From Lytechinus pictus (lineage: Eukaryota): a stretch of DNA of 64,000 nt. The notes under the pieces are model-generated. The model worked only from the letters and a program-made list of their open reading frames with translations. It had not been told where the DNA came from and searched no databases. A program made the translations under genes and the position numbers. The DNA lies in contig NC_087247.1 of assembly GCF_037042905.1 (NCBI RefSeq), positions 14,818,001-14,882,000 on the forward strand. Reading direction: 5' to 3'. Each line of letters opens with the position of its first letter. Positions within the stretch are counted from its first letter, which is position 1. Below, one piece after another: positions 12,835 to 61,568 of this stretch.

Positions 12835-13107
12835 CAGGCGCGGATCCAGGGGGGCTGCGGCACAGGGGGCACGTTCCCCCCCCCCTTTTTAGAAGCAAAA
12901 TAAAATTGTAATGTAAAAATGCCATGAAAACAGAGGTGTGCCCCCTCTTTTGAAACTAAAGGCCTTTTTTTTTTTGCTTGTCTAATTTTTCGGGTACGAA
13001 ATATCCTTAATTTGTCGTTGAAAACCTTTTTTGGGGGGGAGGGGCTTGTCAAAATTTTCCTCCGAAAAATTTACCCCCCCTTTTGGAAAATCCTGGATCC
13101 GACCCTG
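12835..13107. mobile_element. hAT-type MITE with 8-bp TSD
   Basis: TIR CAGG..CGGATCCAGG / CCTGGATCCG..CCTG; TSD CCACTGTC at 12827-12834 and 13108-13115. Confidence 0.9.
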
Positions 13108-17549: not shown

Positions 17550-18300
17550 ATGGGGAATGAAACACTTGGAACAAGTTAGCTTGTGTGATCTGAAAGGAAC
17601 AAAATAATCAATGAAAGTTTGAAAGACAAAATTAATGATATTTAGAAGCATTTGACTACAGAGATCACTCGATGTGGACATTCTCGCATTGGCAATACAA
17701 CCAACATGTTGCCACACACAACCCCTATAAAGCTTTCTGCAGATATTTTACTTGAATTATCTTTATTTTCCAAGAAGATCCATAGACGAGGTGGTTTTGT
17801 TTCATGGGAGGACATTTTAATGAAGGTTTCATAAAATGTATCGTGGGCAAAGATTGTTGCTATCATTAAGATAATGAAAAAAAAAAATGTTTGGGTATAT
17901 TTTAAATGTATAAAGGGGTGAGTTGTACTCCGGCCGGGGCGGATCCAGAATTTTCCAAAAGGGGGGGGGGCACATTTTCCTTGTGAAAATTTGACAAGCA
18001 AGCAAAAAAAAAAGGTCCTCACTTTCAAAAGGAAAACGGTATATTAAGTTAAAACCGTATATTAACATTACAAATTTTGATTATGGCTCTCAATGGGGGG
18101 GGGGGGGGGGGGGGGGGGCACGGGCCGGCTGTGCCCCCCCCCCCTGGATCCGCCACTGGTTGTACTTTTGTAATATCACAAATCCTTGATCACATTACCA
18201 ATGAGTGTCTATCCATAGCATTAGCATTGAGAGTAACACTCATTGCATTCGTGATTCAGCATTCTAATGCTCATTGTTAGTCTATTGTTCTCAAACTAAT
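17550..18300. mobile_element. Older diverged copy of Kolobok-like family B interrupted by a hAT MITE
   Basis: gaatgaaacacttggaacaagttagctt...agcatttga...gagatcact...cattggcaat arms are similar to 16571-17153. Confidence 0.65.
17930..18158. mobile_element. hAT-type MITE with 8-bp TSD (related to 12835-13107, opposite orientation)
   Basis: GGCGGATCCAG...CTGGATCCGCC; TSD GTTGTACT at 17922-17929 and 18159-18166. Confidence 0.88.
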
Positions 18301-20176: not shown

Positions 20177-20805
20177 ACATATTGATATTGCCATATCCCA
20201 TCAAAGGCAATTCACTTTAAAATTGAAAAAAAATTATCGAGCTAGATCATAGTGTTAAAGGACGGACTCCATCCCAACGAAAAGTTTATTTTAATAAAAA
20301 GAGAAAAATTCAATAAGCACAACACTGAAAATTTCATCAAAATCGAATGTGAAATAAAAAAGTTATACATATATCTTTCGCTAAATTTCACAAAACATGC
20401 ACATCCTGGTATAACCTTTATAATTATCATTATCCTTTATGTTTGTTTGCGATGGACAGGGCGGGGGGGGGGGGGTAGGCTGCATGGCTAGATTTGATTC
20501 TCCAGAAAAAAAAATTGAGACGATCAGAGGCCCGTTGCAGAAACTTTTTGCAATCAAACGCAACTCTAAATATCTTACGCAACTGTTAAAACAAATATTT
20601 ATGTTTTTATTTTAAATCTTATCATAAAAAAATATGCAACTCGACCAATTATCAAAAGCGTGATGGGCTCAATCATGACTACTCCCGGATTTTTTTTAGA
20701 CAACCTGCCTGGTTGTCATATTTTATGTTTTCATCTTGGCCTTGATATTTTTATAAATAATCGCTGAAGTCATTTTCGAGTTATTGGTTCAATCATAATA
20801 GTAGC

Positions 20806-25000: not shown

Positions 25001-28000
25001 TGTAGGGACAGTGATTTTCCGTTTAAAAAAATTGCCTTTTCCGTTTCAGAAAATCTCAAATTCCGTTTCAGCATGTCAGAAAACGGAAATTCTGTTTCCC
25101 CATAGACTTTGTACACACGGAAAAATGACAATTCCGTTTACACATTTAATAGCAAAATCACAACACGCACACTCGCACTGGTCAAAATTTGTATCTGCTA
25201 CTGTACCAACAACACAATAAAATCCGTTCTAATCGGATCTATGCGGGTGCATAAAATATTTCTACACACCCATTTTGCATGCATACATCCTCACCTTTCA
25301 TATTATTAGCATTATTTCACGGTGAAATGATATTTCATCGATAATTTGGGGGGTTTTTGGACATCGTTATCATCAGTCAACGGCTATTGCCAATCCGCCA
25401 TCTTGGATTTTAAGACCACGATATCGTGCTGTTACATCTTCAAACGTAGAGGGCAGCAACACACGACCGTGTAAGGAGTTGAACGATATGTGTGCATGTG
25501 AAGCCCAACCCGGCCGGCCGGGTACGGGTACGGTGCGGGGTACAATCGAGTGTGCTGATGTCAAGTGCAGTCACGATGTGTGAATTGTCATGATAGTAGC
25601 GAAGTGAGATCGTGTTTTCTGGGTTTTTGGGGCAATTTAATATTCTCATTTTGTTGTGATTTTGGAGTAATTTCTGTTGCTATTCTGTGTATTTTGAGGG
25701 AAAATACGTTTTCCGTGATTTTCCGTTTGAAATGCCACTTTCCGTTTCAAAAGGCCCTTTCCGTGAATTCCGTCCGTTTTCCGCGATCGCGGAAAATCAC
25801 TGTCCCTAGGGGTGGGGAATATCTCATTTCATCATTTTTATGATTAATTGCATATCAGTATAATGAAAGGTTTCAACCTTCATTTTTTTTGTGATTTCAG
25901 ATGGTGATTCACTTGCAGCTCAAATAAATTTTATAAATCTGCAGACCCATCCAATTTAAAATAAACTTCTGAACTAACCCTTTATAGTTTTATTTTCTTA
26001 CATAGTTAAATATATCAGTTTCAAGTAGTGATTTTAATCAAAATATCAACGCTTTTGGTGGGAATTGTTATTTTAATTGTGTTTTGCTATATCAGTGAAA
26101 TTCGATTAGTTAATTATCAAAGGTTGTGACCATTCATAGTAAGAAGTAAATTGACATTTTTTAATCCAGTTTTTCCAGCAAGGCCATTTTTAAAAGGGTA
26201 CTTTGAAAGGGAAGACGATGCTCACTTTGTAGGGGCATTTGTAATTGACACAAATACGCTCATTTACTTGACAGCCCTTAGCATGGAGCAGGACATTCCA
26301 GACTATGATATGGACTCGGGGGATGAGAGATGGTTGAGTGAAGAGGCAAAACTCTTCACAGATATCACTCCTCTCAAATTTGAGATCATGATGGACAGAT
26401 TGGAAAAGGGGAGCGGTCAGAGGGTAAGTACGAATCCGAACAAAATAACACACGGGCTTGGGGCGATTTCATCCCCAAAATGCTCAAAAGAGCTCTGGAA
26501 ATCCCCATTCATTGCAATGGTAAAGTTTATCCAATGTCGCAAATTTAGGTAGTAGACAGTAGAGTCTGAAAAGTAGCTCCCCAAAATAAAAATAAAAAAT
26601 AATTTTTTGCTTGGGTCACCTTACCAGTAAACTTGTAATAATAATAAGTACACCTTCCATTAGTGTAATATTCGCATAAGTCTATGCATTGTTTTTTTTT
26701 TAGACCAGATTATGAAAAACGTGTACCTCTTTCTAGTCAAATTTCTACTAAGTTTAACAAATTACTGCGGTCCGAATAGAGTTGAATTGTTATATAGAAA
26801 TTAATGCATGGAAATAATTTTCATAAACATAAACAACTCATTTAACTTTGCAACCGTCTATGGCAACTTCCTTGGAAACCATGATTTTGAATGGCTTTCA
26901 AGCCATGTTACCATGGTAGTTGCCACAACTGCAATGCTGCAATAGTTGTAACTCCTTTATGAAACTGCCCCTGATCTATAAAGTATTATATTGTTCTTTT
27001 TTTTCATATCGATATTTGGAAAAACTTTGTACACAAAAACATTTTTATAATGGGGGGGGGGGGGAGGTAAAACTTTGTTCTATAAATTGAAGAAAAACTC
27101 AACATTTTGGCTTATTTAGTCTGTTTTAACATGTTCATCTAAATCAATGAGTCTATTGCTTGCTTGGTATAATTGTATGATTGCCCTTAGTGATGCTTTA
27201 AATAGGAGTTTCTATAAATTTCCCAATGTTATACACATTTCAGGGTATTGGGGATATTAGTGTTGTTTCATATCCATGACATTCTGTATGTCACGTCTAT
27301 CCCGTTACGAAGAAAGGGCACTTTAGGGGCTCCTGTATGACAACAAATTACATGTATCCTGTAAAGCTACTATTTTTGTCCTCTATCATCACAATTTTCA
27401 GGTGATGAATCTGAAGGATGCCAAGGCTCTTTTGAAAGAGGATGATGATCTAATCATAGCAGTCTATGACTATTGGCTCAACAAGAGAGTCAGAGTGGTA
27501 AGTGTTTACAAATCTTAATTGTTCTCTCTCTTTCATATTAAAGTGCTATCAACCATGCATCAATAAAATCCGGTACATATGTATTGTCATTATTGACTTG
27601 TGATAATAGTTAAGGCATGCAAATTGGGAATTTCCTAATATTCTCAATCTTACATGTATCATCAACCATGTTCTTTGCTAGAGTGCATTCTAATTGGTTC
27701 ATTTTCTATTAACCCAGGGACATGCGCTGATACCCGAGGTCAAACAAGAGAAGCGTGATGGCTCTACCAGTAATAATCCCTATGTAGCTTTCAGAAGACG
27801 AACAGAGAAGATGCAGACGAGAAAGAATCGCAAGAACGACGAGGTTTCATATGAGAAGATGCTCAAACTCAAGCGAGACCTTTCCAAGGCAGTGTAAGTT
27901 CCTTTTGATATTCAATTAAGGCGGAACTGCAAATCTGGCAAACCTTGTCCAACAAGTTGCAAAACGATTGTTAACATCATACGTATGTCTTTATGGTAAC

Positions 28001-45552: not shown

Positions 45553-48500
45553 CTGCACATCAAAATTGAGAAATGAAAAGGGATAATTTTTATTATCAAA
45601 AGAAGTTAAATTAAAGATTTATTATAAAAAAATATATGCCTTTGTCTTTCAAAAAGTTTAAATATAAATTGTGGTAAGAAAAATAAAGTCCTGTTACATA
45701 ATACCATGACATTAAATAAAAAGTAAAAATTGAGAAAATTTGAAAAAAATATTTTTAATGAAAACATTAGCGATGAGAACAGTTAATAATGCTCAAAATT
45801 AAGAAAAAATCATAAAGGTAAGTCATGTTTTGACAAAGAGCTGACCGAGATTGCCAGGCATAGGAACTTTATTAAGAATAATAACCTATCTTAACCTACC
45901 TCAGCAGATTTCTGATCTAATATGTGTACTATCTTGCCAGGTCCTTGCTTGCCTCTAATCAGGCTTCCTAAACGATTACCAAATCCTCTTCCAAGAGGAC
46001 CCTTTCCTTTTGGCGCTTCCTGCTTCTCCTATGGAAAAAAAAAAGCACAACAAATTACGGGCAAACTTGCATTAAAGCTAAATGATAGTAGTTGCAGTAA
46101 ACACTGATTTCGTGAGAAAGTCTGTAAAACCAAGGTTAAGTATTACTTTATCATCGTGGATCTAGATCTGGTACAGTTACATAAACTGAACTCTGTGAAA
46201 TCATAAAATCTAAGCTGAAAAACGATCACACTGAAGATCGCCAACACAGATAGGCACACGTGGGACAGTATATTATTATTGCTGGAAGTGCCCGAATCCG
46301 CGCTTATTTTGCTTATTTCTCAGCAATTACACAATTTCTTCCAGAATCCTTTGGCACATATTTTTTATTTATACAAACAGACATTTAGGTGGTCATTATA
46401 TTGGATTCTGTAAAAAGTCATTTTGAGATCGTTACCACAACTGGCATTTACCTTTAACTGCATTACAGACAAATATGCGTTTTCAGACCTTGTAACATAA
46501 AGCTTAGCAAAATGGGCTGAATTCTATAAGTGATTCTATTGATTATTGTGTCAGGTCCCGTATCAAATACAAAGGTTGGCGATCGATCGTACACTAGATT
46601 TTTACGATTGACTGTACATTGTAGTCAATGCAATCAATCATTAAAGAAATATTCTACAATGATTGCTAAGCTTTGAGTTACGGGCCCTTGATAGGGTTAT
46701 AGAAAAAATTCAGCCCCACAAGTAATCGCTTAACTGCTTACACTTAGAACACAGAATCATATTTATCGTCAAACAACCCATGGTTAAGCTATTGGGAGAA
46801 CAAGATTTTTTTTTAGGTGTAGAATGACCTACGGTGGGCAGAGCTATGAAGCCCAGCGCACACTATGCGATCCAACGTGACACAATTTTTTGCATTAGAT
46901 GTGAGAGTTTCAAGAAGTAAAAGGATTTCATTTTAAGTTCAGCATAATGTTAGGAATAACAAAATCATAATTTTGCTTTGCCGCAAACTCTGTGGTTGGA
47001 GTAAAGTCCAAAACGGCTTCAAGTCGTAGCCATCACGATTTGGATCCGAATTTGCTTTTATTCCTACAGGGAGGCTCGAACTACACTGAATTTTTTATTT
47101 CCGTAGTCCTACCACTATTCTGAACTCTGATCGCTAATATTAATTGGTTGGCCAATGTTCATATCAAATGTTATTACAATTCCTTTGAAATTCGGATCGT
47201 GACAAATCGCATAGTGTGCGCTGGCCTAAGGTACCGTGTCAAAACTCAGAACCACATCCTCTGTGGGATTCGGCCTCTAATTACCAATTCTCACACTTCA
47301 TCATAAGCAAATCATATGGGAATGCAGGAAAGCCGCTATGAAAAGATCTATAGTGCCTGTACAGTGGGATTCATGCTACAACACACCGGACAGACTTTTG
47401 ACAAGTTGCCTAGAAAAATCATGACATTTTTATTCTTTACAAAACAAACATCCTAGCCTGAATGCAAATGAGGGGGCACAACAATATCCATAAGCTGGAT
47501 GGAGCTCATTGTGCGCTGCCGCACGCATGGCCTTGGGGCAAAGGACAGGTACTCCAAGCAGGCAAAATATGAGATTTTATTTTCAGGGGATTTAAAAAAA
47601 ATATATTCAAGGGTTCTTTTATGTATTTCAGGTGCAAATCATCCCGAAATCTGTGTAATTTTTTCCCTGATGGCACGTCTCACAAGCATTTGGTGAAAAT
47701 TGAGGAGGTAGTTTGATTCGCAAGATTTGCAATGGAACAGTGGTGGATCCAGGCGGGATGCAAGGGACACCCCCCTCCCCCACTGTATTTTGAGAGTCAC
47801 CGCCTGAACATATATACTGATATACATGTATCATTACTTCACAAACAGCTTGATGAAACACCCACAAATCTTCTTTTAAATATGAGTCAGTAGAGAACTA
47901 CAGAAACAATTCAGAAAGTAACTTCGTGCACTGATAAAGCATGACCAACATTGATTACTTCAATTACCTTCTTTTTCTTTATCTCCTGTGGTAAAGCGTG
48001 TATATGAGAAATACAATATTTAAATGACACTTTTTAAGTGTAAGACACATATTTTTTTGACATGTTCCATTCATCCCAAATCATGTACATTCCAAATATG
48101 AAAAAACAAAACAGAAAAAAATAAAACAATATACAAACTCAAGTGCTGCTCGATCCACCACTTATGAAAAAAAAGGAAAACCCTATTGTGAGTACACTTT
48201 TGTTTGTTAATGTTTTAGTGCCATGGGATTGGAGATATGTATTTCTCGCAACAAAAGAAAAATTAAAGCAAAATTCTTTTTATCCATCACCTCCCTTAAA
48301 AAAAAAACATAACCCTCTCATAATCAGCAGGCCAATTTTTACAACAGTTATGCACCACGCAATTATTATGGCCCTTCAAACACCATCTGGTTGTTAGCAA
48401 AATTTATCATACACCATTTGATTGCCAATCTGTTAACTATCAAAAGATACTTTATATAATATTAGAATGTCCTAAAATCATAAACACCAACTAAATGTTA

Positions 48501-51500
48501 CAAAACCTTTGTACATCATCTGACAAGTATTACCATTCAAACACTAAGTGCAATACTTATCAACCATCAATCACCATCTGATTGTTATATATAATCCATT
48601 AAAAACCCATATGACTAGAAAGCTTCATCTTTATACACCATACAAACCTGTTATCACAATCTGATCATAATCAATACTTTATGTGCGAAAAGAGTTTAAA
48701 CACAATCTGCAAGCAGAGGTAAGGTATAACATTCTAACTATATGTTTATATGAGGGCCTCATAACACAGAGGTTTGTGATGGAGAGCAAATATGAAAGAA
48801 CACTTCTGATTGGTCCCTGGGTAATATTTTGAACAACGTGTGCATGTAACATTGACCATGATTGGCCATGGTCATTTAGCGATTAATCGCCAGCCTTTGT
48901 GTTAATGAGCCCTAGTATTCAACTATGACACTACATTCACTAGAGTACAGCACCCCGTCTGCTGTTTTTCTTGTTATTGTATTTTTTTATGATAACTTCC
49001 AATATAAAGTTAAAATTTAGATTGCTTATTGATTACTTCATTTCCTATGCTTCATTTTCAAATTACAATTCGATTCATTCCATGTAAAGCATTTAGCTTT
49101 TTGGCAAAAAGTTTTTGAAACAAGCCGTAAAAAAACATAATTTTTCAATTTCAGTGAAATATGATAATCTTCCCTTTGACATGGAGAGGATCGAAGCTTC
49201 ATTTTTTCATAGAGTGCCTAAATTTGGGTGAGAATTAAGAAAATAGATAATGTAACCATTACGTGAAAAAATAGCAAAAATGATGAAAGTTTACAATACC
49301 TCCACAGCAAATCTAATTTCATCACCTTTTTTGTTCAAGGAAGATTATTTTTCTGCGAATTTAGACACTCAAGAGCACATTTCCGCTCTTTTGGTATTTC
49401 ATTTATCTCACTTTTATAAATGTATATCAGATGCAAAAAGAGAAGCTTTGCCATGATTTGTAATTAATTGTTATAAGTCAACTCTGTAGTCTTTACAAAT
49501 ACAAGACCCTGTCTTACAAAAAGTTATGATTGATCCAATCAATCCTAACTATGGAATCTATCAATGTCATAAGGAAATAGGAAATCTAAACACTGTCATT
49601 TATTGACAATGATGCATGTATGAGTATACATCCTATAAAGAACACACTTTGAATGGACATGAGCATTGTAGATGTTGATGTCTTTCCATAGCTAAGAATG
49701 ACTGATTTGATCACAACACTATGATAGATTGGTTCCAGGCTTACCTTTGGTTCGATGAGAATTCCTTTCTCAGTAATCTTTGGTAGTTCTTTTAGGTTGG
49801 TATATAGGAACTCAAACTCCACGTTCCATTGGCCAAGCATGTCACCGCGTAAGGTGTAGATCAACCGCCTATCAAAATTAGAAAATAATATACCACAATC
49901 AAACTCCACATTCCATGTCACCGCGTGAGGTGTAGATTAATCGCCTATCAAAATGAAGAAAAAAAAATTCCATTGGCCAAGAATATATGTCACCTCTTGA
50001 GGTGTACATCAGAATGATATACATACACATCATGGTATTACATAAAGTACACTGATCTCTACCAACTTGCTTTTTACTTGCACCTAGATCACTTCAGCCC
50101 ATAACATGTTACCAATTATTTTGTGCAATACTGCGATGCTCTGCATTTTTGGGAGGTTCCATTTTTCCCATTATGGTAAAATCCTCAATTATGTCACAAT
50201 AACCTTGCTTGAGAAAGATCTAGATACGCAACCACAATCTACATACACCCTAGAAGTAAAACAAGCATTGGCTCAAGCGCATTTATTTACATGTATGAGA
50301 AAACCATGAAGTTCTTACCAGAATTCTCTCTTGGAAAGGAGAATAAAATTGTTTCCCTCCAATATAGATTCATGTTTTCGGATGTAGAATATAGAGTAAA
50401 TAACCACATCACGTCAAGACAAACCATCACTTACTCAGCAACCTAGGAGTTACATGCTGTTTGCCTTGGAGGTGATAGCTTCCCCGATACCTTAACCAAC
50501 AGCGATCACTTCCTTATCATTCTTAAACCTTTGGCGCCAAAGTCACCAATTGGTGCCATGTAATAATTCAACATCGCTACAATGGTATGATCTGAGATAA
50601 GCTTACTTGTCTGTAGCTAGTACGTAACTCTTCTTGTCCGGTGTGACCTGCAAGTGAGCAACGTAGTCCTCTGTATGAGCATATTTTCCCTTGTCTACTT
50701 GGAGGAGGAGAGAGTTGCCGAGAGCCATGGACTTGTTGTAGGCTCGGATGATACCGTCTGCACCGATGTAGCGAGGTTCACGCAGCTTCCGGATCTCAAC
50801 CTCGGATTCTACAACTCTGTTGGGGGGAGAAGTGGAAGAATAGGTTTGGTTTAAGGGCACTTTTGTTGCGCTTTCATTGTGACATCACTCACACGTGATA
50901 ACCCACAGACTACTCAACACCATGCATCAAACACAGTGTTTGTCTTTTGAAGTGATTACAAATCTCATTTAAACACTGTGATCTCACGTATCACAAGTAT
51001 TTGTGTTAGAGCGCCACCTTGTGGTGGAATACTCTGAATAATGTTTATGCGACAATAGTAATTCTCAGGGATAATTCTTCACTTATCAGTGCTGCAGTGA
51101 AGTCATGTGCTGCCTAATAAAGTAAGGTTCAATCATACAACTATTGTGAGGTGTCATTTTTATATTGGCATGGTGGCAGCGGTGGGATTTGTCATTCCTT
51201 TATTGTCATATAGTTCTACTGATAAATCCTCATTTCATCCCCCTGTACATCGGATTCATCATTCAGTTAAATATTTCTTTAATTTTTCAATTCTTATTCA
51301 CGACCACATCATCTTGTATATTTGAAGGAAAAGTATTCGACCAGGAAGCATCAATGATGAGAAACGTTGGTGGAATCTGTACTACGAAACATACAGTTTC
51401 CAGCTTGTGAAAATGGCAATCATTTAGTTTCAGACATGACATGATGTCACATTTGATACAAGACACAATAAGAGCATTTCTATGCTGATCAATAAAATTT

Positions 51501-54500
51501 TGTAAAATTCATTGTGTACTTGATAACAGGTAAAAGAAAAACATGTCTCTACATTTTGAAGTGTGATGCTTTCAAACTGACTGAATTGCTATGACCATAA
51601 TGTCAACGTCCAGTTCACCCTTGAAAGTCTTCAATGTAGAGCTTACCTTCTTATTCCCTCAAAGGTCCCGCTGGCAAAGTCAATGATACCGCCAGTAGGC
51701 TTGGCTACCACTCCAGCCAGACCCTTGCCAACACCCTTGAAGAATCCCTTAGCTCCTTCCTTCTTGGCACCTTCAAATGGATTCTTAACAACGCCACTCA
51801 CACCTTCGTAGAAACCCTGTCATAAAAAAATAATCAAGATGTATTAGATGCATCTTTCTGTTCAGATGGGTAGAAAGCACATTGGACAGACAAACAAGTA
51901 GAATCTTTTGCCTTAGGCATGAGACTCGAACATTAGGGGCTCTTGCTTTTCTCCCTTCACCTCTTTTCTCATGCCTATATAGTGAATGTCAACTTTTTGA
52001 CAACCACATGCAGATCTTGAATAGTCAATTTTTACATGTTTTACTGTTTCTGGAAAATTTTGTAACAGAATAAATAGAGAAAATGAATAAGATGACAATT
52101 GTGCTTCAGACAAAAAACGTTTATGGCAAGGATGATGGTGATAATCACGGTATAATTGATGACAGTTGATGATAATTATTGTCACAATCATTCTAACAAT
52201 ATTGATGATATACCTTCATTCCTACTTACCATAACAAGACCCTTGCCACCTCTGGCTAGACCCTCTTGGAATGTAGCAGGTCTTTGATTGATAGCTTGTT
52301 GTCTCTTCTTCTTATAATCTTCATCCATGGTGAGTGCGGCCAGACCTTTACCCAAGGTTCCAGTGATGCGGGATACAGCTCCTGCTGCACCACCTAGAAT
52401 TAAATAATGTTGATGGTTACATCATCATCATAATTACCGTCATCATTGTTGCCATTATCACCCCCACCACGCCACCACCATGACAATCAGAACAATCGTC
52501 ATCCCCATCATNNNNNNNNNNNNNNNNNNNNNNNNNNNNNNNNNNNNNNNNNNNNNNNNNNNNNNNNNNNNNNNNNNNNNNNNNNNNNNNNNNNNNNNNN
52601 NNNNNNNNNNNNNNNNNNNNNNNNNNNNNNNNNNNNNNNNNNNNNGTCAGGAATTGCGAAATTGATTTTTAGGATGTTATTCAATATATTTAGATAATAT
52701 ACATGCTATACATACCAACTGCATGTCCAAAGAGACTCCTCATACCAAGAGCTACACCCTCAGCAAACTCCTCAGGACCTTGTACAATTCCCTGGTTGGA
52801 TAGAGAAAGAAAAAAAGATTTGTCTGTAAAGAGTATTTCTTAGAAGTTTCAAATTATCCAAATCACATACTATGGAATTTTAACCTTAATACTCCTGGGG
52901 TATTTCTGGTCATTTTATAATTAGATTAGGGGTAGGGGGGAGGGGTGGGTTGATTATGGACCCCTATAAAATGTTGACTGTAGAATGTGTGATCATTATA
53001 AAGATTTACTTATTGGACTTAAAATTCACTCAATCTTTTTATCTTATTTCACATGGTTTAATTACGCTAATCTTTATGGGAAATTAGAATTCAGCTGAAA
53101 ATCTATCAATAAAACCCAGAACTGGAGTATTAGGGCTAAAAGCATTTGAACAATTAATAAAAACACAAACAAGAAGAAATGGGAAAACATAACCTGACAA
53201 GGTTTGCACAAAACGCCAGTTCCTACTCCTCCGATGAAACCAAATGGGTTACCAATCACATCAAACCCAAGAACAAGGACATAGAGCTGTTTGATGGTCT
53301 GATTAAGAGTAATGGACTCACCTGATAAGGTTCATAGAAGAGGTCTTTGACACCTGTTCCGACTCCTCTGACGAAACCAAATGGGTTACCAATCACATCA
53401 AGACCAAGAACGAGAACATAGAGCTGTTTGATGGCCTGATTAGAGTAATGGACTCACCTGATAAGGTTCATAGAAGAGGTCTTTGACACCAGTTCCGACT
53501 CCTCTGACGAAACCAAATGGGTTACCGATCACATCAAGACCAAGAACGAGAACATAGAGCTGTTTGATGGCCTGATTAGAGTAATGGACTCACCTGATAA
53601 GGTTCATAGAAGAGGTCTTTGACACCTGTTCCTACTCCTCTGACGAAACCAAATGGGTTACCAATCACATCAAGACCAAGAACTAGAACATAGAGCTGTT
53701 TGATGGCCTGATTAGAGTAATGGACTCACCTGATAAGGTTCATAGAAGAGGTCTTTGACACCAGTTCCTACTCCTCTGACGAAACCAAATGGGTTACCAA
53801 TCACATCAAGACCAAGAACTAGAACATAGAGCTGTTTGATGGCCTAATTGGAGTAATGGACTCACCTGATAAGGTTCATAGAAGAGGTCTTTGACACCAG
53901 TTCCTACTCCTCTGACGAAACCAAATGGGTTACCAATCACATCAAGACCAAGAACGAGAACATAGAACTGTTTGATGGCCTGATTGGAGTAATGAACTCA
54001 CTTGATAAGGTTCATAGAAGAGGTCTTTGACACCAGTTCCTACTCCTCTGACGAAACCAAATGGGTTACCAATCACATCAAGACCAAGAACGAGAACATA
54101 GAGCTGTTTGATGGCCTGATTAGAGTAATGGACTCACCTGATAAGGTTCATAGAAGAGGTCTTTGACACCTGTTCCTACTCCTCTGACGAAACCAAATGG
54201 GTTACCGATCACATCAAGACCAAGAACGAGAACATAGAGCTGTTTGATGGCCTGATTAGAGTAATGGACTCACCTGATAAGGTTCATAGAAGAGGTCTTT
54301 GACACCTGTTCCTACTCCTCTGACGAAACCAAATGGGTTACCAATCACATCAAGACCAAGAACGAGAACATAGAACTGTTTGATGGCCTGATTGGAGTAA
54401 TGAACTCACTTGATAAGGTTCATAGAAGAGGTCTTTGACACCAGTTCCTACTCCTCTGACGAAACCAAATGGGTTACCAATCACATCAAGACCAAGAACG

Positions 54501-57500
54501 AGAACATAGAGCTGTTTGATGGCCTGATTAGAGTAATGGACTCACCTGATAAGGTTCATAGAAGAGGTCTTTGACACCTGTTCCTACTCCTCTGACGAAA
54601 CCAAATGGGTTACCGATCACATCAAGACCAAGAACGAGAACATAGAGCTGTTTGATGGCCTGATTAGAGTAATGGACTCACCTGATAAGGTTCATAGAAG
54701 AGGTCTTTGACACCTGTTCCTACTCCTCTGACGAAACCAAATGGGTTACCAATCACATCAAGACCAAGAACTAGAACATAGAGCTGTTTGATGGCCTGAT
54801 TAGAGTAATGGACTCACCTGATAAGGTTCATAGAAGAGGTCTTTGACACCAGTTCCTACTCCTCTGACGAAACCAAATGGGTTACCAGTCACATCAAGAC
54901 CAAGAACGAGAACATAGAGCTGTTTGATGGCCTGATTGGAGTAATGGACTCACCTGATATGGTTCATAGAAGAGGTCTTTGACACCAGTTCCTACTCCTC
55001 TGACGAAACCAAATGGGTTACCAATCACATCAAGACCAAGAACGAGGACATAGAGCTGTTTGATGGCCTGATTGGAGTAATGGCGAACTACCTCCGATGA
55101 TAGCTGCTCTGGGCTGTAGAACTGGTACTCTCTCTCAAAGAAACCAAGCCTAGATGGTGTTTCACAAAGATTTAAGAGTGTCTTAAGAAGCATGCTTAAA
55201 CACCAACATGCACATAATGCGGTGTTGTATTACATACAGGGTTCCCTCATAATAATAATAATAATAATAATATAGAGTATTTCTAAAGCGCCAAATCCAC
55301 ATTATGTGCTCACGGCACTGCGAAAAGGAAATAACAGAAAAATAACATGGAGCAGGAAGGGACATGATGTATGGAAGATCATGGTTTGATGCACATTGCA
55401 CAGGTTTTTATTGTCTGGAATCCAACATGGCTGGCTGCCAAATCCACATTAATCATGTGCTCACGGCACTGCGAAAAGGAAATAAGAGAAAAATTACATG
55501 GAGCAGGAAGGGACATGATGTATGGAAGATCATGGATTGATGCACATGCACAGGTTTTTATTGTCTGGAATCCAACATGGCTGCCTGTGAAAACCCTTCA
55601 TATTGCACGCAAATAAGATTCAATTGCAATTCTAAGGGGGTGTTGCAAGAAAATATTTGCGATCAATTGCAAATATTCTGTTGCAATTTTACAACTGATA
55701 TAGATCAACGTTAGCTGTAGCAAATTAGATTAAACTTCTTGTTTCAAGGAGCAAATTAGCAATCAATCACTAATTTGCAATTAACTGCAAGACAATGATT
55801 GATTTAGGGACCAAAAATTGACTTGCAATTGATCGCAAGCTTCTTGCAACACCCCGATCAGTCATGCTTAAATTTTTATGAAACACTTCCAGGTTGAAAG
55901 GAATGGAGACAGTAAATGAATGGGTTAGGAAGACTACATGGATCAATCGTCGCAAGAAATTTCATTCAATACTTTGAAAATCCTTTTCAATCTTCCATAT
56001 CCCAAATTGTTCAGATTTATACTGTTAATACCATACACTATGTAAAAGAAACAGTCTGTCGCTCACAATTTATATACCAATTCAGTTTGAGTGCCATTTA
56101 AATGGTCTTCTTGTAACAGATACTGACACAGGATTGCACTTGAATCAATGCATAATTCATAGTATTTTCTTTTAATTTGGATGGGTCCAGCTATGGTTAA
56201 CATGAGTAAATGTTTTTAATTAGGTAGATGTAAACTGATTTAATGTGTTTTCACTGAAAGCCCAAGAGTCTAAAATTTCAATAAAATAATCCCTCAAAAT
56301 TGGACAGATTCTACTCACTTGAAGATGACATCATCTACGTTGGTCAGGGTGACCCCAACGCTCTGTAGTAGGAGATTGAGGGCGTTCTGACGGGCGTTGG
56401 CCTGGGCACTCAATAAAGACTTATCCTCTTTGCCGGTCTCTGACAGAGAAAAACTCACATGAATCTAAGAAGGAATGGAAAGACAAGGTTTCAGGTATAT
56501 ATCACCATCATCATCATCATAGTAATAATCTTAATAATAATTTCAGAGCTCACAGCTTTTTGAGGAATTACTTCCTGCCGGTACCCATTTTCAACTATTC
56601 AACTTTAGACCTTGATACCCAATAAACTAATCAGATCATTGTTGCTCATATATGAATATTTGGAACAAGTTTAAAGTTAATCCATCGAATGGTTCCTTAG
56701 TCATTGCAAGTATGAAAATTGGACAGCTGGACAGACGTCCAAAAATGCATCCAGCAACCATCTACAGTGGGCAGAGGCATAATCATCTCTGTAGAGGGGA
56801 TGTTGTGGTCTAGTGGTTCTGCCTCACTTCCTTTCATTCAGTAGGTCATGGGTTCAAATTCCAGCTATGGCGTGATTTCCTTCAGCAAGAAATTGACCCA
56901 CATTTTTCTGCACTCAACCCAGGTGAGGTGAATGGGTATCCGGTAGGATTAATTCCTTGAATGCACCGAGCACTGAAAGGCAGTTCAAGCTAAAACGGGG
57001 GTAATAATAATTGTGCGCCTCGGAATAGATTATTTCTAGGTAGATGGACCTATGCATATGCCTATTATTGTTATTGTTATAAGTGAACTTCTTGGATTTT
57101 GTAAAATACTTTTTTTTCTTCTTTTTTAAAGTGCACACCTGTTACCAAAATGTGCATAGCATTTCCATTTATCTGAATGCAGGATAAAAGAGCATTGCTG
57201 ATTAAATACCTTGCTCACGGGCATAGGTGCTGCTGCCGGGGATCGGCACCTTAGACCACTCAGCCACCTCCATTGAAAGAGTGCTCAAGCTAAAGCTTGA
57301 TTAATAACAAATACGCACTGTGGAATAGATTATTTCACTCCCCAGGGAGTGGAAATTGTGCACTTTTCGTGCGGGATTGAAATGAATCCAATGACCGGGG
57401 TAATAATATGCTGTAACGCGCTTTGAGCCATTCTGGGAAAAGCGCTTTATAAAAATTTGCTATTATTATTATTATTTCTAGATAGATGGACTTATGCAAA

Positions 57501-60500
57501 TGCCTGTAACTATTATTGCTATTAGAGAACTTCTTGGATGTTGTATAGTACTCACCTTAAGTGGAGAGAGATGGAATGAATCATAGAAGTTGAAGTCTTT
57601 GGCCAAAGCAACCTTGACATACTCAGCATCGGCTAACTCTAATCTTATTAGCTCCTTGTCCAACTCAAGCAGAGCAACCTATAAATAAAACAACAAAAAT
57701 ACTTCTTGATGACACATGGAAAGTAAATCTCAATCACATGATTGTTTGAGAGCAGAGAAGTCATCAGACATTTGTGTTATCTGACACAAAATTTTCTAAT
57801 GACTTTTGAAACACAAGGACCTGGTATTAATAATCTTGTCACTTAATTACACCAACACACTAGTCTCTTATCTTGAGTAATTAACAAAACAAAAACAGAT
57901 TTTATTAGATAAAATTGCAGATCAGAAGTACAAAAAGGGTAAATCATTTTATATCCTATACAAAAACAAAGGAATTAAGTGCTTTTAATAAGATGATATA
58001 ATCATTATTATTTTCAATGTCATTATTTTCCACATCTTCTTTGTGTGTAAGATGACTGAAACACCCTCCTTTTGACATCTACAAAATCATTCTCTTCTGC
58101 ATCCAGCTATTCTTTATTAGTAAACTTGCAAGAACCATGGGAGTGTTTCACAAAGCAAATAGTGTTTTTCACCTGCTAATTTGTTCTCAGCCAATCAGAG
58201 GCAAGGATTTCAGTAGCTTATAACAATTGACAGTGAAAATTAACTATTTGTTTTGGTAACACGCTCCTCAGATTTCCATCCTAACCCTATCAATGACTTG
58301 TTCTTCATCCGATTGGAAGATGGCTGCTATGTTGGCCAGGAATCCCATGTCCAGTTTGACCGCCATCTCTTGGACCAAAAGCTTGAGGTACTTGATCTGT
58401 TTGACCGTACTGTGCTCCGAGAAACGAACCATCATGCTGAACTCTAGAAGCTGTTTAGGGGCTGAGGACCAAAAAAAAAAACACACAAATTATTTATATA
58501 TTTTCAGATTTTTTATTTTCCATTTTGTAAAATTGGCTTCGCTAAAATATAATTTATATTTAGGGTCAATGAACTTAGATCATGTTGGGGGAATCATTTT
58601 TTTACTTCCAGATTTTTGTCAGGCTTGGTTTATTCAACGCCGCTGTAGTTTATTTACCAGAAAATATGGTATTTGTAGTTATATAATTTCTACAGAAATC
58701 AAACAGATCAGCAACTATTTCAAAGCTTTGCAAGACTCTTTTGTCATAATGTCTAGAGATTGGAACAGACTGCCTGCAGATTTTAAAGATTCTCTGTATC
58801 TGGAATCATAAAAAAAAAGTCAAATATGATGACATTCAATTCATATCACATGCTATTCCCCACATCTCAAGTAAGTGAGATGCATCAACACTTTCATATT
58901 TTTTTAAAGCAAATGTAAATATTCTCACTATGAATAAATGACTAATACAACAAAACAACAAACAATATCCAATTCTGTGTAGTATAAAAAGTCTACCTAC
59001 CATTCTCAGCTGCCACTGTCTTAGGGAGGGGTACGGGAGCCACCGGGGTAGGGAAGATAGCAGCCGGCATCTGATTGTCCACCTGTAGTCTGTTGATGGT
59101 CAGATGAAGCTGAAGCTGATGCTTAGAGGTACGCACTTGGGCCCACACACCCGAATGGTAGGTACGTCTTAGCTGCTGCTTCTTAGGGGCCAGCATCAAC
59201 ATACGTCCATAGTCAACCTGTGGATAGACAAGACATGCATGAGGTTTACTGAAATGCGATGAAAAAAAGCCGTAAATGAACAGGAATCTAGATTGACAAT
59301 GAAATGATGAATAACTGTTGAAAGTTGGTACATGTACATCTCTAGCAAAGTGGCTAAGAGGGTGTTGGAAGAAAATTAGTAATAAAAATACTACATAACA
59401 GATATGAGGCGCTTACTGCCGGTGTTTCTAAGCGCACTGTGTTCTGATTATGGTTTATACTTGGGAGAGGAAAAAAAAATGACACAACTATTAAAACAAC
59501 TAATACTAATAATCAGAACTGGTGTGCACCTACATAATCAATTGCATATTTCTGTTGCAATTTTATAAATGAGGGATCAATTTTAGCTGTAGAAAATCAG
59601 TTTACACTTCTTGTGGTAAGAAACAGATCAGCTATCAATTGCAAATTGCAATCAATTGAAAGACATATTATTAATTTTGGGTCCCTAAATAGATTTATGA
59701 TTGATAGTAGGTTTTTTGTAACACCCCATAAGATTTTATCAAGGTACCGTACCTCCATGCCATAATCTAACTTGTAAACTCTGGGTGGAAGATCCTTCTG
59801 ATCACTGGCATCTAGTCCTGCCTTGACGAATCCTTCCTCTAAGCTCTTCATCTCCTTCATGCTGAGATCCTTGTATCGACGACGGACCTTGTTCTGCCAG
59901 ATGATCCCAGAGCTGCCAACGAGAAAGAGACAAAATGATAATGNNNNNNNNNNNNNNNNNNNNNNNNNNNNNNNNNNNNNNNNNNNNNNNNNNNNNNNNN
60001 NNNNNNNNNNNNNNNNNNNNNNNNNNNNNNNNNNNNNNNNNNNNNNNNNNNNNNNNNNNNNNNNNNNNNNNNNNNNNNNNNNNNNNNNNNNNNNNNNNNN
60101 NNNNNNNNNNNNNNNNNNNNNNNNNNNNNNNNNNNNNNNNNNNNNNNNNNNNNNNNNNNNNNNNNNNNNNNNNNNNNNNNNNNNNNNNNNNNNNNNNNNN
60201 NNNNNNNNNNNNNNNNNNNNNNNNNNNNNNNNNNNNNNNNNNNNNNNNNNNNNNNNNNNNNNNNNNNNNNNNNNNNGGTGTTGATGACAAAGATGATGAT
60301 GATGATGATGATAATGATATTGATGATAATGGTGATGATTATGATAGCGGTGGTGATAATGATATGATGATGATGATTGTGGTGATGATGATGATGGTAA
60401 TAATATGTTTACAAAGTACTTAGAATCATTCCGATTGCATAAAGTGTTTTTGAAAAGCTGAGTATTAACAATATCTAATGATAATGGCTACCTAACCAAG

Positions 60501-60905
60501 GCTCAGTCTCACACATCATGTGCCTGTTATCAGTTACCAGTGGGATCAATGATTTCTTCACAAGGGCAATTATCCACAGAGGGGTAGGCATTGGGTCATC
60601 TCTCTTAAGTAATAAGTCTACTTATTATTACAGAGATGATAGCATTCATTGAGAACACTTAGAAAACTTGAGGCACTGAAGTTTTATCAAATAATATATA
60701 TCAGAATTTACTTATCCTAACAACCATAATCTCGGAATGACAAAAAACAATAAAAGGTTTTATACACAGCAGACTGTGCAAGAATGACATACCTGATGAG
60801 GCCAATGTATGCTACTTCTGTTCTTGATATGTTGTTGACAAGAGAAAGACCAATGCCTGGAAGTGAGACTAACAACTCCAAATCAGGCTGTTCTAATTCT
60901 GCAGC
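45499..60905 (-). CDS. VPS13C: VPS13A/C-like bridge-like lipid transfer protein, C-terminal ~685 aa (5' part beyond window end); exons 60793..60905, 59753..59912, 59001..59217, 58286..58461, 57556..57678, 56319..56464, 54954..55149, 52716..52791, 52230..52393, 51647..51816, 50607..50816, 49745..49868, (47968..47985), 45900..46028, 45499..45552
   Basis: Motifs [15 protein letters not shown], a WWE-like insert (IIWQ...SLEEGF...VDYGRMLM...LRR), [128 protein letters not shown]. All junctions are GT-AG with consistent phase. Assignment is to the A/C clade; A versus C is not resolvable. Confidence 0.93.
45900..46028 (-). CDS. VPS13C: VPS13 penultimate exon
   Basis: tttttttccatag|[43 protein letters not shown]|gtaggt. 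Confidence 0.85.
46076..46453. mobile_element. Kolobok-like MITE (family C)
   Basis: TTAA|AGCTAAATGATAGT...ACTGGCATTTACCT|TTAA. Confidence 0.75.
46851..47226. mobile_element. Harbinger-like MITE
   Basis: TIR CCAGCGCACACTATGCGAT / ATCGCATAGTGTGCGCTGG; flanks GAA / TAA. Confidence 0.85.
47968..47985 (-). CDS. VPS13C: Candidate 18-nt in-frame microexon of VPS13 (EIKKKK)
   Basis: ctttaccacag|GAG ATA AAG AAA AAG AAG|gtaatt; phase 0/0 between two phase-0 junctions; no transcript evidence. Confidence 0.5.
49745..49868 (-). CDS. VPS13C: VPS13 exon
   Basis: [41 protein letters not shown]; gatag|...AAG|gtaagc. Confidence 0.9.
49899..50011 (-). repeat. Two decayed tandem copies of the acceptor/5' part of VPS13 exon 49745..49868
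   Basis: 49899-49954 repeats tcaaactccac...gtcaccgcgt.aggtgtagat.aa.cgcctatcaaaat with an 11-nt deletion; 49968-50011 repeats ttccattggccaag...atgtcacc...aggtgta. Confidence 0.9.
50607..50816 (-). CDS. VPS13C: VPS13 exon (start of PH-like region)
   Basis: [28 protein letters not shown]...SYVLATD; aacag|...AA|gtaagc. Confidence 0.94.
51011..51024 (-). promoter_or_regulatory. CTCF-like motif
   Basis: Minus strand CCACAAGGTGGCGC has one mismatch to the core CCASYAGRKGGCRS; it lies in otherwise AT-rich intron. Confidence 0.4.
51647..51816 (-). CDS. VPS13C: VPS13 exon
   Basis: [56 protein letters not shown]; gacag|...AG|gtaagc. Confidence 0.95.
52230..52393 (-). CDS. VPS13C: VPS13 exon (ATG2_C-type helices)
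   Basis: [32 protein letters not shown]...[11 protein letters not shown]; tctag|...ATG|gtaagt. Confidence 0.95.
52512..52645. other. Assembly gap (134 N) next to CAT/CAC-rich microsatellite
   Basis: Run of N. Confidence 1.
52716..52791 (-). CDS. VPS13C: VPS13 exon
   Basis: [25 protein letters not shown]; accag|...G|gtatgt. Confidence 0.94.
53194..55082 (-). repeat. 136-bp tandem array made of the 3' 129 nt of a VPS13 exon plus its donor (GTGAGTC); source exon + 12 near-identical copies + 1 decayed copy
   Basis: Exon-copy 3' ends at 54954 (real exon), 54818, 54682, 54546, 54410, 54274, 54138, 54002, 53866, 53730, 53594, 53458 and 53322 (exact 136-bp period), and at 53194 (decayed, with indels). 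Confidence 0.98.
54954..55149 (-). CDS. VPS13C: VPS13 exon (source of the tandem array)
   Basis: [65 protein letters not shown]; tctag|...CAG|gtgagt. Confidence 0.93.
55290..55583. repeat. ~147-bp direct tandem duplication next to an (AAT)n retroelement-like tail (55249-55290)
   Basis: gccaaatccacatt...ctggaatccaacatggctg occurs at 55290-55432 and 55437-55583. Confidence 0.92.
56319..56464 (-). CDS. VPS13C: VPS13 exon
   Basis: IHVSFSLS...[20 protein letters not shown]; cttag|...AA|gtgagt. Confidence 0.93.
56797..57080 (+). mobile_element. tRNA-derived SINE
   Basis: TGGTCTAGTGG A box, GGTTCAAATTCC B box, CTCAACCCAGGTGAGGTGAATGGGTA core, (TAT/TGT)n tail. Confidence 0.85.
57556..57678 (-). 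CDS. VPS13C: VPS13 exon
   Basis: [12 protein letters not shown]...[12 protein letters not shown]; tatag|...AAG|gtgagt. Confidence 0.93.
58286..58461 (-). CDS. VPS13C: VPS13 exon
   Basis: [41 protein letters not shown]...; cctcag|...AGG|gttagg. Confidence 0.92.
59001..59217 (-). CDS. VPS13C: VPS13 exon
   Basis: [23 protein letters not shown]...[13 protein letters not shown]...PKTVAAEN; cacag|...G|gtaggt. Confidence 0.93.
59753..59912 (-). CDS. VPS13C: VPS13 exon (WWE-like region)
   Basis: [30 protein letters not shown]...LDYGME; ggcag|...GAG|gtacgg. Confidence 0.9.
59944..60276. other. Assembly gap (333 N) followed by (GAT)n microsatellite 60277-60402
   Basis: Run of N. Confidence 1.
60793..60905 (-). 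CDS. VPS13C: VPS13 exon
   Basis: [37 protein letters not shown]; ctgtag|...AG|gtatgt. Confidence 0.92.
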
Positions 60906-61568
60906 CTACAGGGAGAAAACAAACATAGAGTAAAAGAGCCAAAGTTTTAATCTATTGCCTACAAAAAAATCATGTTGTCCCTGTAATAAGACAAAGTGAT
61001 TTAGAATATTTAGTAGTCAACAAGTTAATACTGACCCACATGCAAATAGGCTTAAGGTTGGAATGGGGAATAGGACCTTTTAACTATACCTTTTGAGAAA
61101 AAATAGTTTCACTTACAATTATATTTTTCAGAAAACAAAATAAATCTTAATCAAAATCTTCCATTTCAAATTGTAAAATAAGTGACTATCAACCTTAGAA
61201 TGTTGAGTCACATACAAATCTTATCTAATTACCTTCTTTCCAATCTAGAGCTTTTGGCCAGCCCAAAGATATTTTGGCTGGTCAAAATTTAGATGTAAAG
61301 GCATTCTGGCATGTCAAAGATGTAGTTCTGGTCCAACTACGACCCTCCTTACTTACATGTAGATGGTAAAGGGTACAACACTTTGGCTGGCCCAAATCAC
61401 AAGGTCACGCATGCATGCCTGTGTGCGAGATTACTACGGGTGTTTTGGCTAAATCATGTTTTTACAATAGTTTTAGAAACTTGTAACTAGTGGTTATGTG
61501 AAAGGTTTGCGTTGGTTGAAATTTAGCCTTGCCAAAATCTTGGGGTAGATGGGAAAGAGGTACATTAA

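What the first reader, a model, noticed from the sequence alone, without database searches (positions are those of the whole stretch)
53322..55082. Variation among the intronic exon copies is overwhelmingly synonymous
By hand comparison of the 12 copies and the source exon I find 11 distinct substitutions in the 129-nt exon-derived part and no indels. Eight are synonymous: Ser TCC/TCT, Val GTC/GTT, Leu CTC/CTA, Ile ATT/ATC, Val GTA/GTC, Thr ACT/ACA, Pro CCA/CCT and Gln CAG/CAA; four of these are third-position transversions. Three are not: Leu->Phe in two copies, Ile->Thr in one, and Gln->TAG in the spacer part of one. Neutral intronic DNA should give only roughly a quarter to a third synonymous. 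Inference: either the copies are translated and under selection, or the array keeps exchanging sequence with the functional exon by gene conversion or unequal crossover. In the second case it would act as an archive or reservoir of past exon alleles.
Basis: partly seen in the sequence, partly recalled or inferred. Interest (0 to 1): 0.8.

Follow-up and report, generated by a model that had tools for sequence, protein, structure and literature searches.

The report
Exon-boundary minisatellite with mostly synonymous variants
A sea-urchin VPS13 gene carries, just inside an intron, 12 young tandem copies of the end of the preceding exon; their differences lean towards silent changes, which is probably a by-product of sequence exchange with the one real, selected copy rather than a sign that the copies are translated.

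Summary
A 136-bp tandem array lies on the minus strand at 53315-55082. Each unit is the last 129 nt of a VPS13 exon plus 7 nt of intron (GTGAGTC). It has 13 in-register units without indels and 11 variable exon-derived sites: 8 synonymous and 3 not (L>F, I>T, Q>stop).

"Overwhelmingly" is too strong. The plain binomial gives p=7e-4. Matching each change to its mutation type gives p=0.005-0.013. Dropping the two differences fixed between the real exon and all copies gives 0.007-0.058. The estimate is omega about 0.1-0.2, with an upper 95% limit of 0.5-0.8.

Translation of the copies has no support. Read-through is frameshifted and full of stops. The copies lack the exon's acceptor. All 26 full-length annotated echinoid VPS13 proteins checked carry the motif once. 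The three replacements hit residues that are invariant across echinoids.

Exchange among units is shown by seven four-gamete conflicts. My simulations show that selection on the first unit alone can give omega of 0.07-0.23, with replacements confined to the 5' half, as observed, but only at very high exchange rates. The real exon's two private alleles argue against that regime. Chance remains a serious rival.

The closest known anatomy is the human F7 IVS7 boundary-spanning VNTR. No population or RNA data were reachable.

The parts
54954..55149 (-). Functional VPS13 exon (196 nt). After its first base it encodes [65 protein letters not shown]. The acceptor AG is at 55150-55151 and the donor CAG|GTGAGTC follows 54954.
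   Evidence: Translation. tblastn of the L. variegatus and A. japonica VPS13 proteins. JGI hits to this exon are named VPS13A/C.
54947..55082 (-). Unit 0 of the array: the last 129 nt of the real exon plus the first 7 nt of the intron (GTGAGTC). It carries two alleles found in no other unit (36C, 123A).
53315..54946 (-). Units 1-12: twelve intronic 136-nt copies without indels, each with its own copy of the 5' splice site. Ten have CAG|GTGAGTC; units 4 and 7 have CAA|GTGAGTT. Units 2=10, 3=6 and 4=7 are identical, and 5 and 8 differ at one site, which marks a 408-bp higher-order duplication.
53187..53314 (-). Unit 13: an older, decayed terminal copy that runs into the unique intron. It has a 1-nt insertion, an 11-nt deletion and a 2-nt insertion. 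After polarising with S. purpuratus, about 3 silent and 6 replacement changes are on its own lineage. The donor has decayed to GTTATG.
   Evidence: tblastn hit at 53212-53304, 74-87% identity.
52714..52794 (-). Next VPS13 exon ([26 protein letters not shown]), phase 0, the partner of the unit 0 donor. The intron between them is about 2.16 kb, of which about 1.76 kb is array.
45870..60965 (-). 3' part of the VPS13A/C-like gene (15 mapped exons) in which the array lies.
   Evidence: tblastn of P0094 and P0343. Pfam VPS13_C on 50603-50860, E=1e-17.

Best explanation
The array is a young, lineage-specific, non-coding minisatellite. It arose by tandem duplication of a 136-bp segment that straddles the exon/intron boundary of a sea-urchin VPS13 gene.

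Only the first unit, which is continuous with the rest of the exon, enters the mRNA. Its donor is the most upstream of 13 near-identical donors. The other 12 units are intron.

The bias towards silent variants is a by-product of concerted evolution next to a strongly selected copy.
- Units are reshuffled by unequal crossover and gene conversion.
- An expansion that involves the first unit copies part of a real, selection-filtered exon allele into the array.
- A contraction fuses the 3' part of an interior unit onto the exon, where any replacement change is exposed to selection.
- In a very polymorphic, large population such as sea urchins have, unit lineages therefore pass repeatedly through the selected first position.
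- Silent differences survive this filter. Replacement differences survive only if recent or near the 5' end of the unit.

No function of the array is implied.

Shown: the anatomy, the counts, omega below 1, exchange or duplication among units, absence of the array in two other echinoderms, and neutral decay of the old edge copy.

Inferred: use of the first donor only, exchange with the first unit, and the filter itself.
For: Anatomy.

Gene identity and host:
- Pfam VPS13_C.
- 95-96% amino-acid identity per exon to L. variegatus VPS13 for most exons; 92% overall to L. pictus and 87% to S. purpuratus.

Constraint on the real exon:
- The 43-aa unit peptide is identical in Lytechinus, S. purpuratus and Diadema.
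- Unit 0 differs from the S. purpuratus exon at 14 of 129 nt, all silent.

Silent excess in the copies: 8 of 11, p=7e-4 to 0.013.

Exchange among units: seven four-gamete-incompatible site pairs and a duplicated 3-unit block.

Replacement variants:
- They sit in fewer units than silent ones (permutation p=0.036).
- They lie at unit positions 13, 28 and 59.

Forward simulations with selection on the first unit only:
- Omega among the units of one haplotype was 0.23 and 0.09 and 0.15, 0.14 and 0.07. Here unequal exchange was 500-1500 events per generation in a population of 500 haplotypes, with any offset.
- No-selection controls gave 0.97-1.15.
- Under selection, 75-84% of replacement variants fell in the first 59 nt, against 50% without selection.

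Internal control: the old edge copy (unit 13) has frameshifting indels and about 3 silent to 6 replacement changes on its own lineage.

Lineage specificity: the S. purpuratus (L005) and A. japonica (L003) orthologous introns are about 540 and 900 nt and hold no exon copies.
Against: - The filter needs very frequent exchange. At 8-80 events per generation in a population of 400 haplotypes, simulated omega stayed at 0.51-0.94.
- In the fast-exchange regime the first unit had two or more private alleles in only 1-5% of sampled haplotypes, against 19% in the neutral control. Here it has two (36C, 123A).
- Exchange between unit 0 and the interior rests only on the shared 9C allele. Recurrent mutation could explain that, and the conflicts at site 96.
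- The statistic rests on 11 events. In the most conservative test p is 0.058.
- The finding was picked because it looked unusual.
- Only one haplotype was available. No population, sister-species (Lytechinus) or RNA data could be fetched.
- The simulation is a proof of principle with arbitrary scaled parameters, not a fit to the data.
Confidence: 0.45

Rival explanations
1. Chance. The array is an ordinary, neutrally evolving intronic minisatellite. The 8:3 split is a sampling fluctuation, helped by a transition-rich mutation spectrum and by counting silent substitutions that actually occurred in the selected first unit.
For: - There are only 11 events.
- C<->T changes are 43-44% silent in this exon, so the matched expectation is 0.32-0.34 rather than 0.23.
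- Site 123, and possibly site 9, can be read as changes in the functional exon. Units 1-12, unit 13 and S. purpuratus all have 123T.
- Excluding the two fixed differences leaves 6 of 9, p up to 0.058.
- The first unit's two private alleles fit the neutral simulation (19%) better than fast exchange (1-5%).
- The three replacements include a stop codon and changes at invariant residues.
- The finding was selected for looking odd.
Against: - Every version of the test that keeps all 11 sites gives p of 0.013 or less.
- Two independent side patterns point the same way. Replacements are rarer (p=0.036) and all three lie in the first 59 nt ((59/129)^3, about 0.10).
- In no-selection simulations, 0 of 445 sampled arrays with at least 8 variable exon-derived sites reached 8/11 silent.
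Confidence: 0.35
2. The copies are translated. Unit positions 16-129 (114 nt, 38 codons, phase 0-0) act as in-frame cassette exons. They would use the AATCAG|GCC site at unit position 15|16 as acceptor and the unit's own CAG|GTGAGT as donor. This would add repeats of AIKQ...EPYQ to VPS13, and purifying selection would keep them coding.
For: - Joining CAG| to |GCC keeps the frame, read directly from the sequence.
- The same position is a genuine intron site in vertebrate-like VPS13A. ORFs P0141, P0143 and P0154 read through an intron between HYSKQ and AIKQ.
- By my count, the pyrimidine content before this AG (about 60%) is no worse than before the exon's real acceptor (about 59%).
- Under this reading the TAG of unit 9 is intronic, and the coding part has 7 silent to 2 replacement variants.
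Against: - Adjacent cassettes would be separated by only 22 nt, too short for a metazoan intron (established knowledge).
- All 26 full-length annotated echinoid VPS13 proteins checked, including 14 L. pictus and 7 S. purpuratus isoforms, have the motif once.
- No protein among the 150 best library hits repeats it.
- The segment is invariant across echinoids, so an inserted duplicate would probably be harmful.
- L>F and I>T occur at those invariant residues.
- The array is absent from S. purpuratus and the crinoid.
Confidence: 0.07
3. Assembly or sequencing artefact. The copy number or the variants are errors, or the array mixes the two haplotypes of a highly heterozygous animal.
For: Near-identical 136-bp repeats over 1.8 kb are hard to assemble. 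Sea-urchin genomes are very heterozygous (established knowledge). The first unit's distinct alleles could reflect a haplotype switch at the array edge.
Against: - There are no indels in 12 units, although indels are the usual long-read error.
- 8 of the 12 variable sites have their minority allele in two or more units, in consistent combinations.
- Identical unit pairs sit in a regular 3-unit block.
- Random errors would not favour third codon positions (p=0.009).
- A haplotype mix would change the copy order, not the silent excess.
Confidence: 0.05

Closest known systems
Human F7 intron 7 (IVS7) 37-bp VNTR minisatellite (Borensztajn et al. 2006, PMC1557585)
   Same: It is a tandem array whose first element spans the exon/intron boundary. 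The authentic donor is therefore followed by several identical 5' pseudo-sites that normally stay silent. That paper showed that the most upstream site is chosen by 5'->3' scanning. Here 13 units each carry the donor, and the first is continuous with the exon.
   Different: - The unit is 136 bp, of which 129 are exon, so each copy holds 43 codons and silent and replacement changes can be counted.
- It lies in a sea-urchin VPS13 gene.
- Donor choice was not tested here.
- I did not find a silent bias reported for F7.
Concerted evolution between a functional gene and non-functional copies (pseudogene-gene conversion; unequal-crossover models of tandem families)
   Same: Non-functional copies stay similar to a selected copy through recombinational exchange and can look constrained without being expressed (established knowledge). 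Exchange among units is shown by four-gamete conflicts, and omega is below 1.
   Different: - The selected copy here is the edge unit of the same array, and only part of an exon.
- The filter acts through contractions that fuse interior units to the exon.
- Direct exchange with the selected unit is inferred, not shown.
Tandem exon duplication giving mutually exclusive alternative exons (Dscam type and many smaller cases)
   Same: Head-to-tail copies of exon sequence lie inside one gene, and each copy has a good donor.
   Different: - The copies lack the exon's 5' 67 nt and its acceptor.
- The unit length is not a multiple of 3.
- The spacers are 7 nt, or 22 nt if the internal AG is used.
- The copies differ almost only silently, so they would give no protein diversity.
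Silent-cassette donor arrays (chicken pseudo-V genes, Borrelia vls, Neisseria pilS)
   Same: An array of unexpressed partial copies sits next to an expressed copy, with possible transfer by gene conversion.
   Different: Those arrays store protein-level diversity and are kept for it. Here 8 of 11 variants are silent and the exon is invariant across echinoids, so a reservoir would have nothing useful to deliver.

Membership tests
Exon/intron-boundary minisatellite (F7 IVS7 type) | Head-to-tail tandem units | tested here: met
   TRF: period 136, 13.7 copies, 97% matches, 0% indels. The units are in register.
Exon/intron-boundary minisatellite (F7 IVS7 type) | The first unit spans the exon/intron boundary | tested here: met
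   Unit 0 (54947-55082) is continuous with the unique 5' part of the exon (55083-55149) and ends with GTGAGTC.
Exon/intron-boundary minisatellite (F7 IVS7 type) | Every unit repeats the 5' splice site | tested here: met
   13 junction matches. Eleven are TATCAG|GTGAGTC and two are TATCAA|GTGAGTT.
Exon/intron-boundary minisatellite (F7 IVS7 type) | Only the most upstream donor is used and the pseudo-sites are silent | not testable with these tools
   This needs RNA data. Indirect evidence: any later donor gives a frameshift with stops, and the echinoid proteins checked have one copy of the motif.
Exon/intron-boundary minisatellite (F7 IVS7 type) | Copy number varies between individuals | not testable with these tools
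   No same-species sequence was found. DNA for the Lytechinus loci was not returned.
Tandemly duplicated alternative exons | Each copy is a complete exon with its own acceptor and donor, separated by spliceable introns | tested here: not met
   The copies start 67 nt inside the exon. The spacer is 7 nt, or 22 nt with the internal AG. The unit is 136 nt, not a multiple of 3.
Silent-cassette reservoir for gene conversion | The cassettes encode different protein variants | tested here: not met
   Only L>F (2 units), I>T (1 unit) and a stop (1 unit). The other 8 variants are silent.
Concerted evolution with a selected copy | Recombinational exchange among copies | tested here: met
   Seven four-gamete-incompatible site pairs, identical units at lags 3 and 8, and a 408-bp block duplication. 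Recurrent mutation at site 96 is an alternative for five of the seven.
Concerted evolution with a selected copy | Exchange between the selected copy and the non-functional copies | tested here: inconclusive
   The 9C allele is shared by unit 0 and units 1, 5, 8 and 9, and sites 9 and 36 show all four combinations once unit 13 is included. However, unit 0 has two private alleles, which is rare under fast exchange in simulation.
VPS13 (intermembrane lipid transfer protein) gene | Sequence similarity across several exons to VPS13 proteins, and the VPS13_C domain | tested here: met
   Pfam PF25037, E=1.1e-17. 15 exons align to L. variegatus VPS13, most at 95-96% identity.

The most novel reading that the evidence does not exclude
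The interior units are not inert. The 114-nt core of each unit (unit positions 16-129) is recognised as an in-frame cassette exon. Its acceptor would be an AG|G at exactly the place where vertebrate-like VPS13A has an intron. If so, this sea urchin makes VPS13 isoforms with one or more extra 38-residue modules, and purifying selection on those isoforms explains the silent bias.
Probability: 0.07. Interest if true: 0.65.

Novelty: new variant of a known kind. Interest (0 to 1): 0.35.

Why it matters
If the exchange explanation holds, this is a clean natural example of selection on one functional repeat unit giving a non-coding tandem array a coding-like substitution pattern. That is a caution for pN/pS-based calls of 'functional' duplicated exons and pseudogenes.

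It would also be a tractable locus for two measurements in a hyper-polymorphic animal: unequal-exchange rates, and donor choice among 13 near-identical 5' splice sites.

If it is chance, the array is just another boundary-spanning minisatellite. Either way there is no sign of a new biological system.

Tried and rejected
- Same-species or population data. A search with the 65-aa exon peptide found no hit closer than a Tara Oceans contig (P0014/L001). That contig is 96% identical in protein, differs from unit 0 at 24 of 129 nt and has no array in the roughly 140 nt of intron it holds. Scanning JGI metagenome contigs for the unit junction gave 0 hits.\n- Sister-species DNA. The L. variegatus, L. 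pictus and D. setosum VPS13 loci gave no DNA because the gene range exceeds 100 kb. Isoforms X3 of L. pictus and S. purpuratus were not on record. Only S. purpuratus (L005) and the crinoid A. japonica (L003) were readable, and both lack the array.\n- 'Archive of old alleles'. Polarising with S. purpuratus, the Tara contig, the crinoid and unit 13 gave conflicting ancestral states at sites 9, 96 and 123. Matches to the outgroup were no more frequent than chance.\n- Proteins with repeated motifs. The '2 stretches' hits in the representative search turned out to be ORFs reading through an intron, not tandem motifs.\n- Unit 13 as a neutral control. Its direction is as expected, but the Fisher test against the copies is not significant (p=0.39). 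The real exon (14:0) against the copies (8:3) gives p=0.07.\n- CpG hypermutability. By inspection of the unit sequence, only site 39 is in a CpG, and its change is C>A.\n- First simulation settings. With small-offset exchange the arrays saturated with variation and gave omega of about 0.94.\n- Literature. A first search for exon-derived intronic arrays with silent bias found nothing relevant. A second search led to the F7 VNTR.\n- Pfam on the 65-aa exon alone gave no hit.


Full report
**What is there.** TRF finds a single strong array at 53216-55083: period 136, 13.7 copies, 97% matches and no indels. The coding strand is minus. Translating it shows a VPS13 exon ending ...[43 protein letters not shown]|GTGAGTC.

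- Each 136-nt unit is the last 129 nt (43 codons) of that exon plus the first 7 nt of the intron.
- Unit 0 (54947-55082) is continuous with the exon's unique 5' part (55083-55149; acceptor AG at 55150-55151).
- Units 1-12 (53315-54946) follow in the intron, all in register.
- Unit 13 (about 53187-53314) is an older, decayed copy that runs into the unique intron.
- The next exon (GIVQGPEEF...) is at 52714-52794, phase 0.
- The unit junction occurs 13 times in the window against 0 in shuffles.

**Gene and organism.**
- Pfam VPS13_C hits the exon at 50603-50860, and hits to the exon peptide are named VPS13A/C.
- Ranking full-length VPS13 proteins against the window gives L. pictus 92%, S. purpuratus 87% and Diadema 82%. 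Most exons are 95-96% identical to L. variegatus XP_041460359.
- The window is therefore sea-urchin DNA, close to but not identical with Lytechinus.
- The 43-aa unit peptide is identical in Lytechinus, S. purpuratus and Diadema.
- Unit 0 differs from the S. purpuratus exon at 14 of 129 nt, all silent. The real exon is under very strong purifying selection.

**Checking the counts.** There are 11 variable sites in the 129 nt.
- Eight are silent: sites 9, 36, 39, 60, 90, 96, 123 and 129. Four of them are third-position transversions.
- Three are not: 28 L>F in units 5 and 8, 59 I>T in unit 1, and 13 Q>TAG in unit 9.
- There is one more variable site in the 7-nt intron part (136).
- Sites 36 and 123 separate unit 0 from all twelve copies.

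**How unusual is this?**
- Silent sites are 30.0 of 129 (0.233), and the binomial P(8 or more of 11) is 7e-4.
- The observed changes are rich in C<->T, which are 43-44% silent in this exon. Matching each event to its base-change type raises the expectation to 0.32-0.34 and gives P=0.005-0.013.
- Site 123 probably changed in the functional exon itself, since the copies, unit 13 and S. purpuratus all have T. Its being silent then needs no special explanation.
- Dropping both fixed differences leaves 6 of 9, with P=0.007 by site counts and up to 0.058 type-matched in the most conservative direction.
- From these counts and a Clopper-Pearson interval on 8/11 (my own calculation, not a tool output), omega is about 0.11-0.18 with an upper 95% limit near 0.5-0.8.
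- The bias is real but moderate.
- Two side patterns agree with it. Replacements sit in fewer units than silent variants (permutation p=0.036), and all three lie in the first 59 nt of the unit.

**Are the copies translated?** Nothing supports it.
- Read-through is out of frame (136 = 45x3+1) and hits stops at once.
- The copies lack the acceptor and the first 67 nt of the exon.
- All 26 full-length annotated echinoid VPS13 proteins checked have the GNPFG motif once.
- The exhaustive representative search gave 985 hits. None of the best 150 carries tandem motifs.
- The few '2-stretch' hits are ORFs that read through an intron lying between HYSKQ and AIKQ in vertebrate-like VPS13A.
- That intron position coincides with an AG|G at unit position 15|16. 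Positions 16-129 would thus be an in-frame 114-nt cassette with a plausible acceptor and a strong donor.
- I keep this as the most novel reading not excluded. Against it, neighbouring cassettes would be only 22 nt apart, the segment is invariant in echinoids, and the array is absent from S. purpuratus (about 540-nt intron) and from the crinoid A. japonica (about 900 nt; species identity from PMC9793003).

**Exchange.**
- Seven pairs of sites show all four allele combinations. Units 2=10, 3=6 and 4=7 are identical, and units 5 and 8 differ at one site, which marks a duplicated 408-bp block.
- Units are therefore duplicated and recombined. Recurrent mutation at site 96 could account for five of the seven conflicts.
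- Unit 0 shares 9C with units 1, 5, 8 and 9.
- Unit 13 shows what unconstrained decay looks like: three indels and about 3 silent to 6 replacement changes on its own lineage.

**Can selection on the first unit alone bias the whole array?** I ran forward simulations with haplotypes of 136-site units. They included mutation, equal and unequal crossover with breakpoints inside units, and lethality only for replacement alleles in unit 0.
- With modest exchange, omega among the units of one haplotype stayed at 0.51-0.94.
- With 500-1500 exchange events per generation in a population of 500 haplotypes and free offsets, it fell to 0.07-0.23. No-selection controls gave 0.97-1.15.
- In that regime 75-84% of surviving replacement variants lay in the first 59 nt. 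A contraction fuses the 3' part of an interior unit to the exon, so 3' replacements are purged. The control gave 50%. The observed positions are 13, 28 and 59.
- The same regime seldom leaves unit 0 with two private alleles: 1-5%, against 19% in the neutral control. Here it has two.
- The mechanism is thus workable and fits two features, but it needs minisatellite-like exchange rates in a very large population, and it fits a third feature poorly.

**Verdict.**
- 'Overwhelmingly synonymous' should be read as an omega of about 0.1-0.2 that is significantly below 1 in most, but not all, tests.
- I rank the explanations as follows: exchange with, and filtering through, the selected first unit (0.45); chance in a neutral array (0.35); translated cassettes (0.07); artefact (0.05).
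- The 'archive of past alleles' is not supported beyond chance. Two of 8 silent variants match S. purpuratus, where I estimate about 1.4 by chance.

**Comparison with known systems.** The anatomy is that of the human F7 IVS7 VNTR, whose first element spans the exon/intron boundary and whose identical downstream donors stay silent (PMC1557585). The differences are that almost the whole unit here is exon and that a silent bias can be measured. The array is not a set of alternative exons and not a diversity reservoir. I rate it a new variant of a known kind, of modest interest. It is chiefly a caution for pN/pS-based inference and a possible model for donor choice and array turnover.

Noticed in passing
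window 53315-55082 (-), unit positions 15|16: The AG|G inside each unit (AATCAG|GCC, between codons Q and A of HYSNQ|AIKQ) lies exactly where vertebrate-like VPS13A genes have an intron. ORFs P0141, P0143 and P0154 read through it. The sea-urchin exon is therefore a fusion of two exons of those orthologues, and unit positions 16-129 equal one of them.
   Followed up: partly
window 53315-55082 (-), unit ends: The exon end plus donor (CCTCTTCTATGAACCTTATCAG|GTGAGT) has a pyrimidine-rich run and an AG directly followed by a consensus donor. This is the layout of recursive splice sites. Splicing from any earlier donor to a later unit's ...TATCAG would regenerate the same junction, so stepwise removal of units would be invisible in the mRNA. 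This is inference from the sequence only.
   Followed up: no
window 55301-55445 and 55452-55595: Two direct copies, 150-151 bp apart and 92-96% identical, of a roughly 145-bp element in the intron just upstream of the exon. They are unrelated to the exon array.
   Followed up: partly
window 26151-26552 (+) and further + strand ORFs to about 36 kb: A second gene lies on the + strand. This ORF hits Pfam EPL1 (enhancer of polycomb-like), E=2.5e-8. From memory, the ORF at 27694-27897 also looks EPC-like.
   Followed up: partly
window 53187-53314 (-): The decayed edge copy (unit 13) has CTT at site 39, like S. purpuratus, where unit 0 and most copies have CTC. It may therefore preserve an older exon state. 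It also shares 9T and 123T with the young copies but 36C with the real exon, so no simple tree fits.
   Followed up: partly
window 22885-23066; 60292-60396; N runs 52512-52645 and 59944-60276: A (TAA)n/AT-rich microsatellite, and a (GAT)n run that overlaps the end of and continues past the 333-nt N run. The 134-nt N run lies in the intron after the exon at 52714-52794.
   Followed up: no
window 12795-13052, 17642-18068, 20381-20563 and others: ORF translations repeatedly show the same G-run-containing element on both strands (PPPFWKILDP / PPPFGKFWIRPG motifs). It is probably a dispersed repeat family.
   Followed up: no
L001/L002 (Tara Oceans marine metagenome contigs): Planktonic metagenome contigs carry an orthologous exon with 96% protein identity to the unit, differing from unit 0 at 24 of 129 nt, with a different intron start (GTAGAGG). 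Presumably they come from the larva of another echinoderm.
   Followed up: partly
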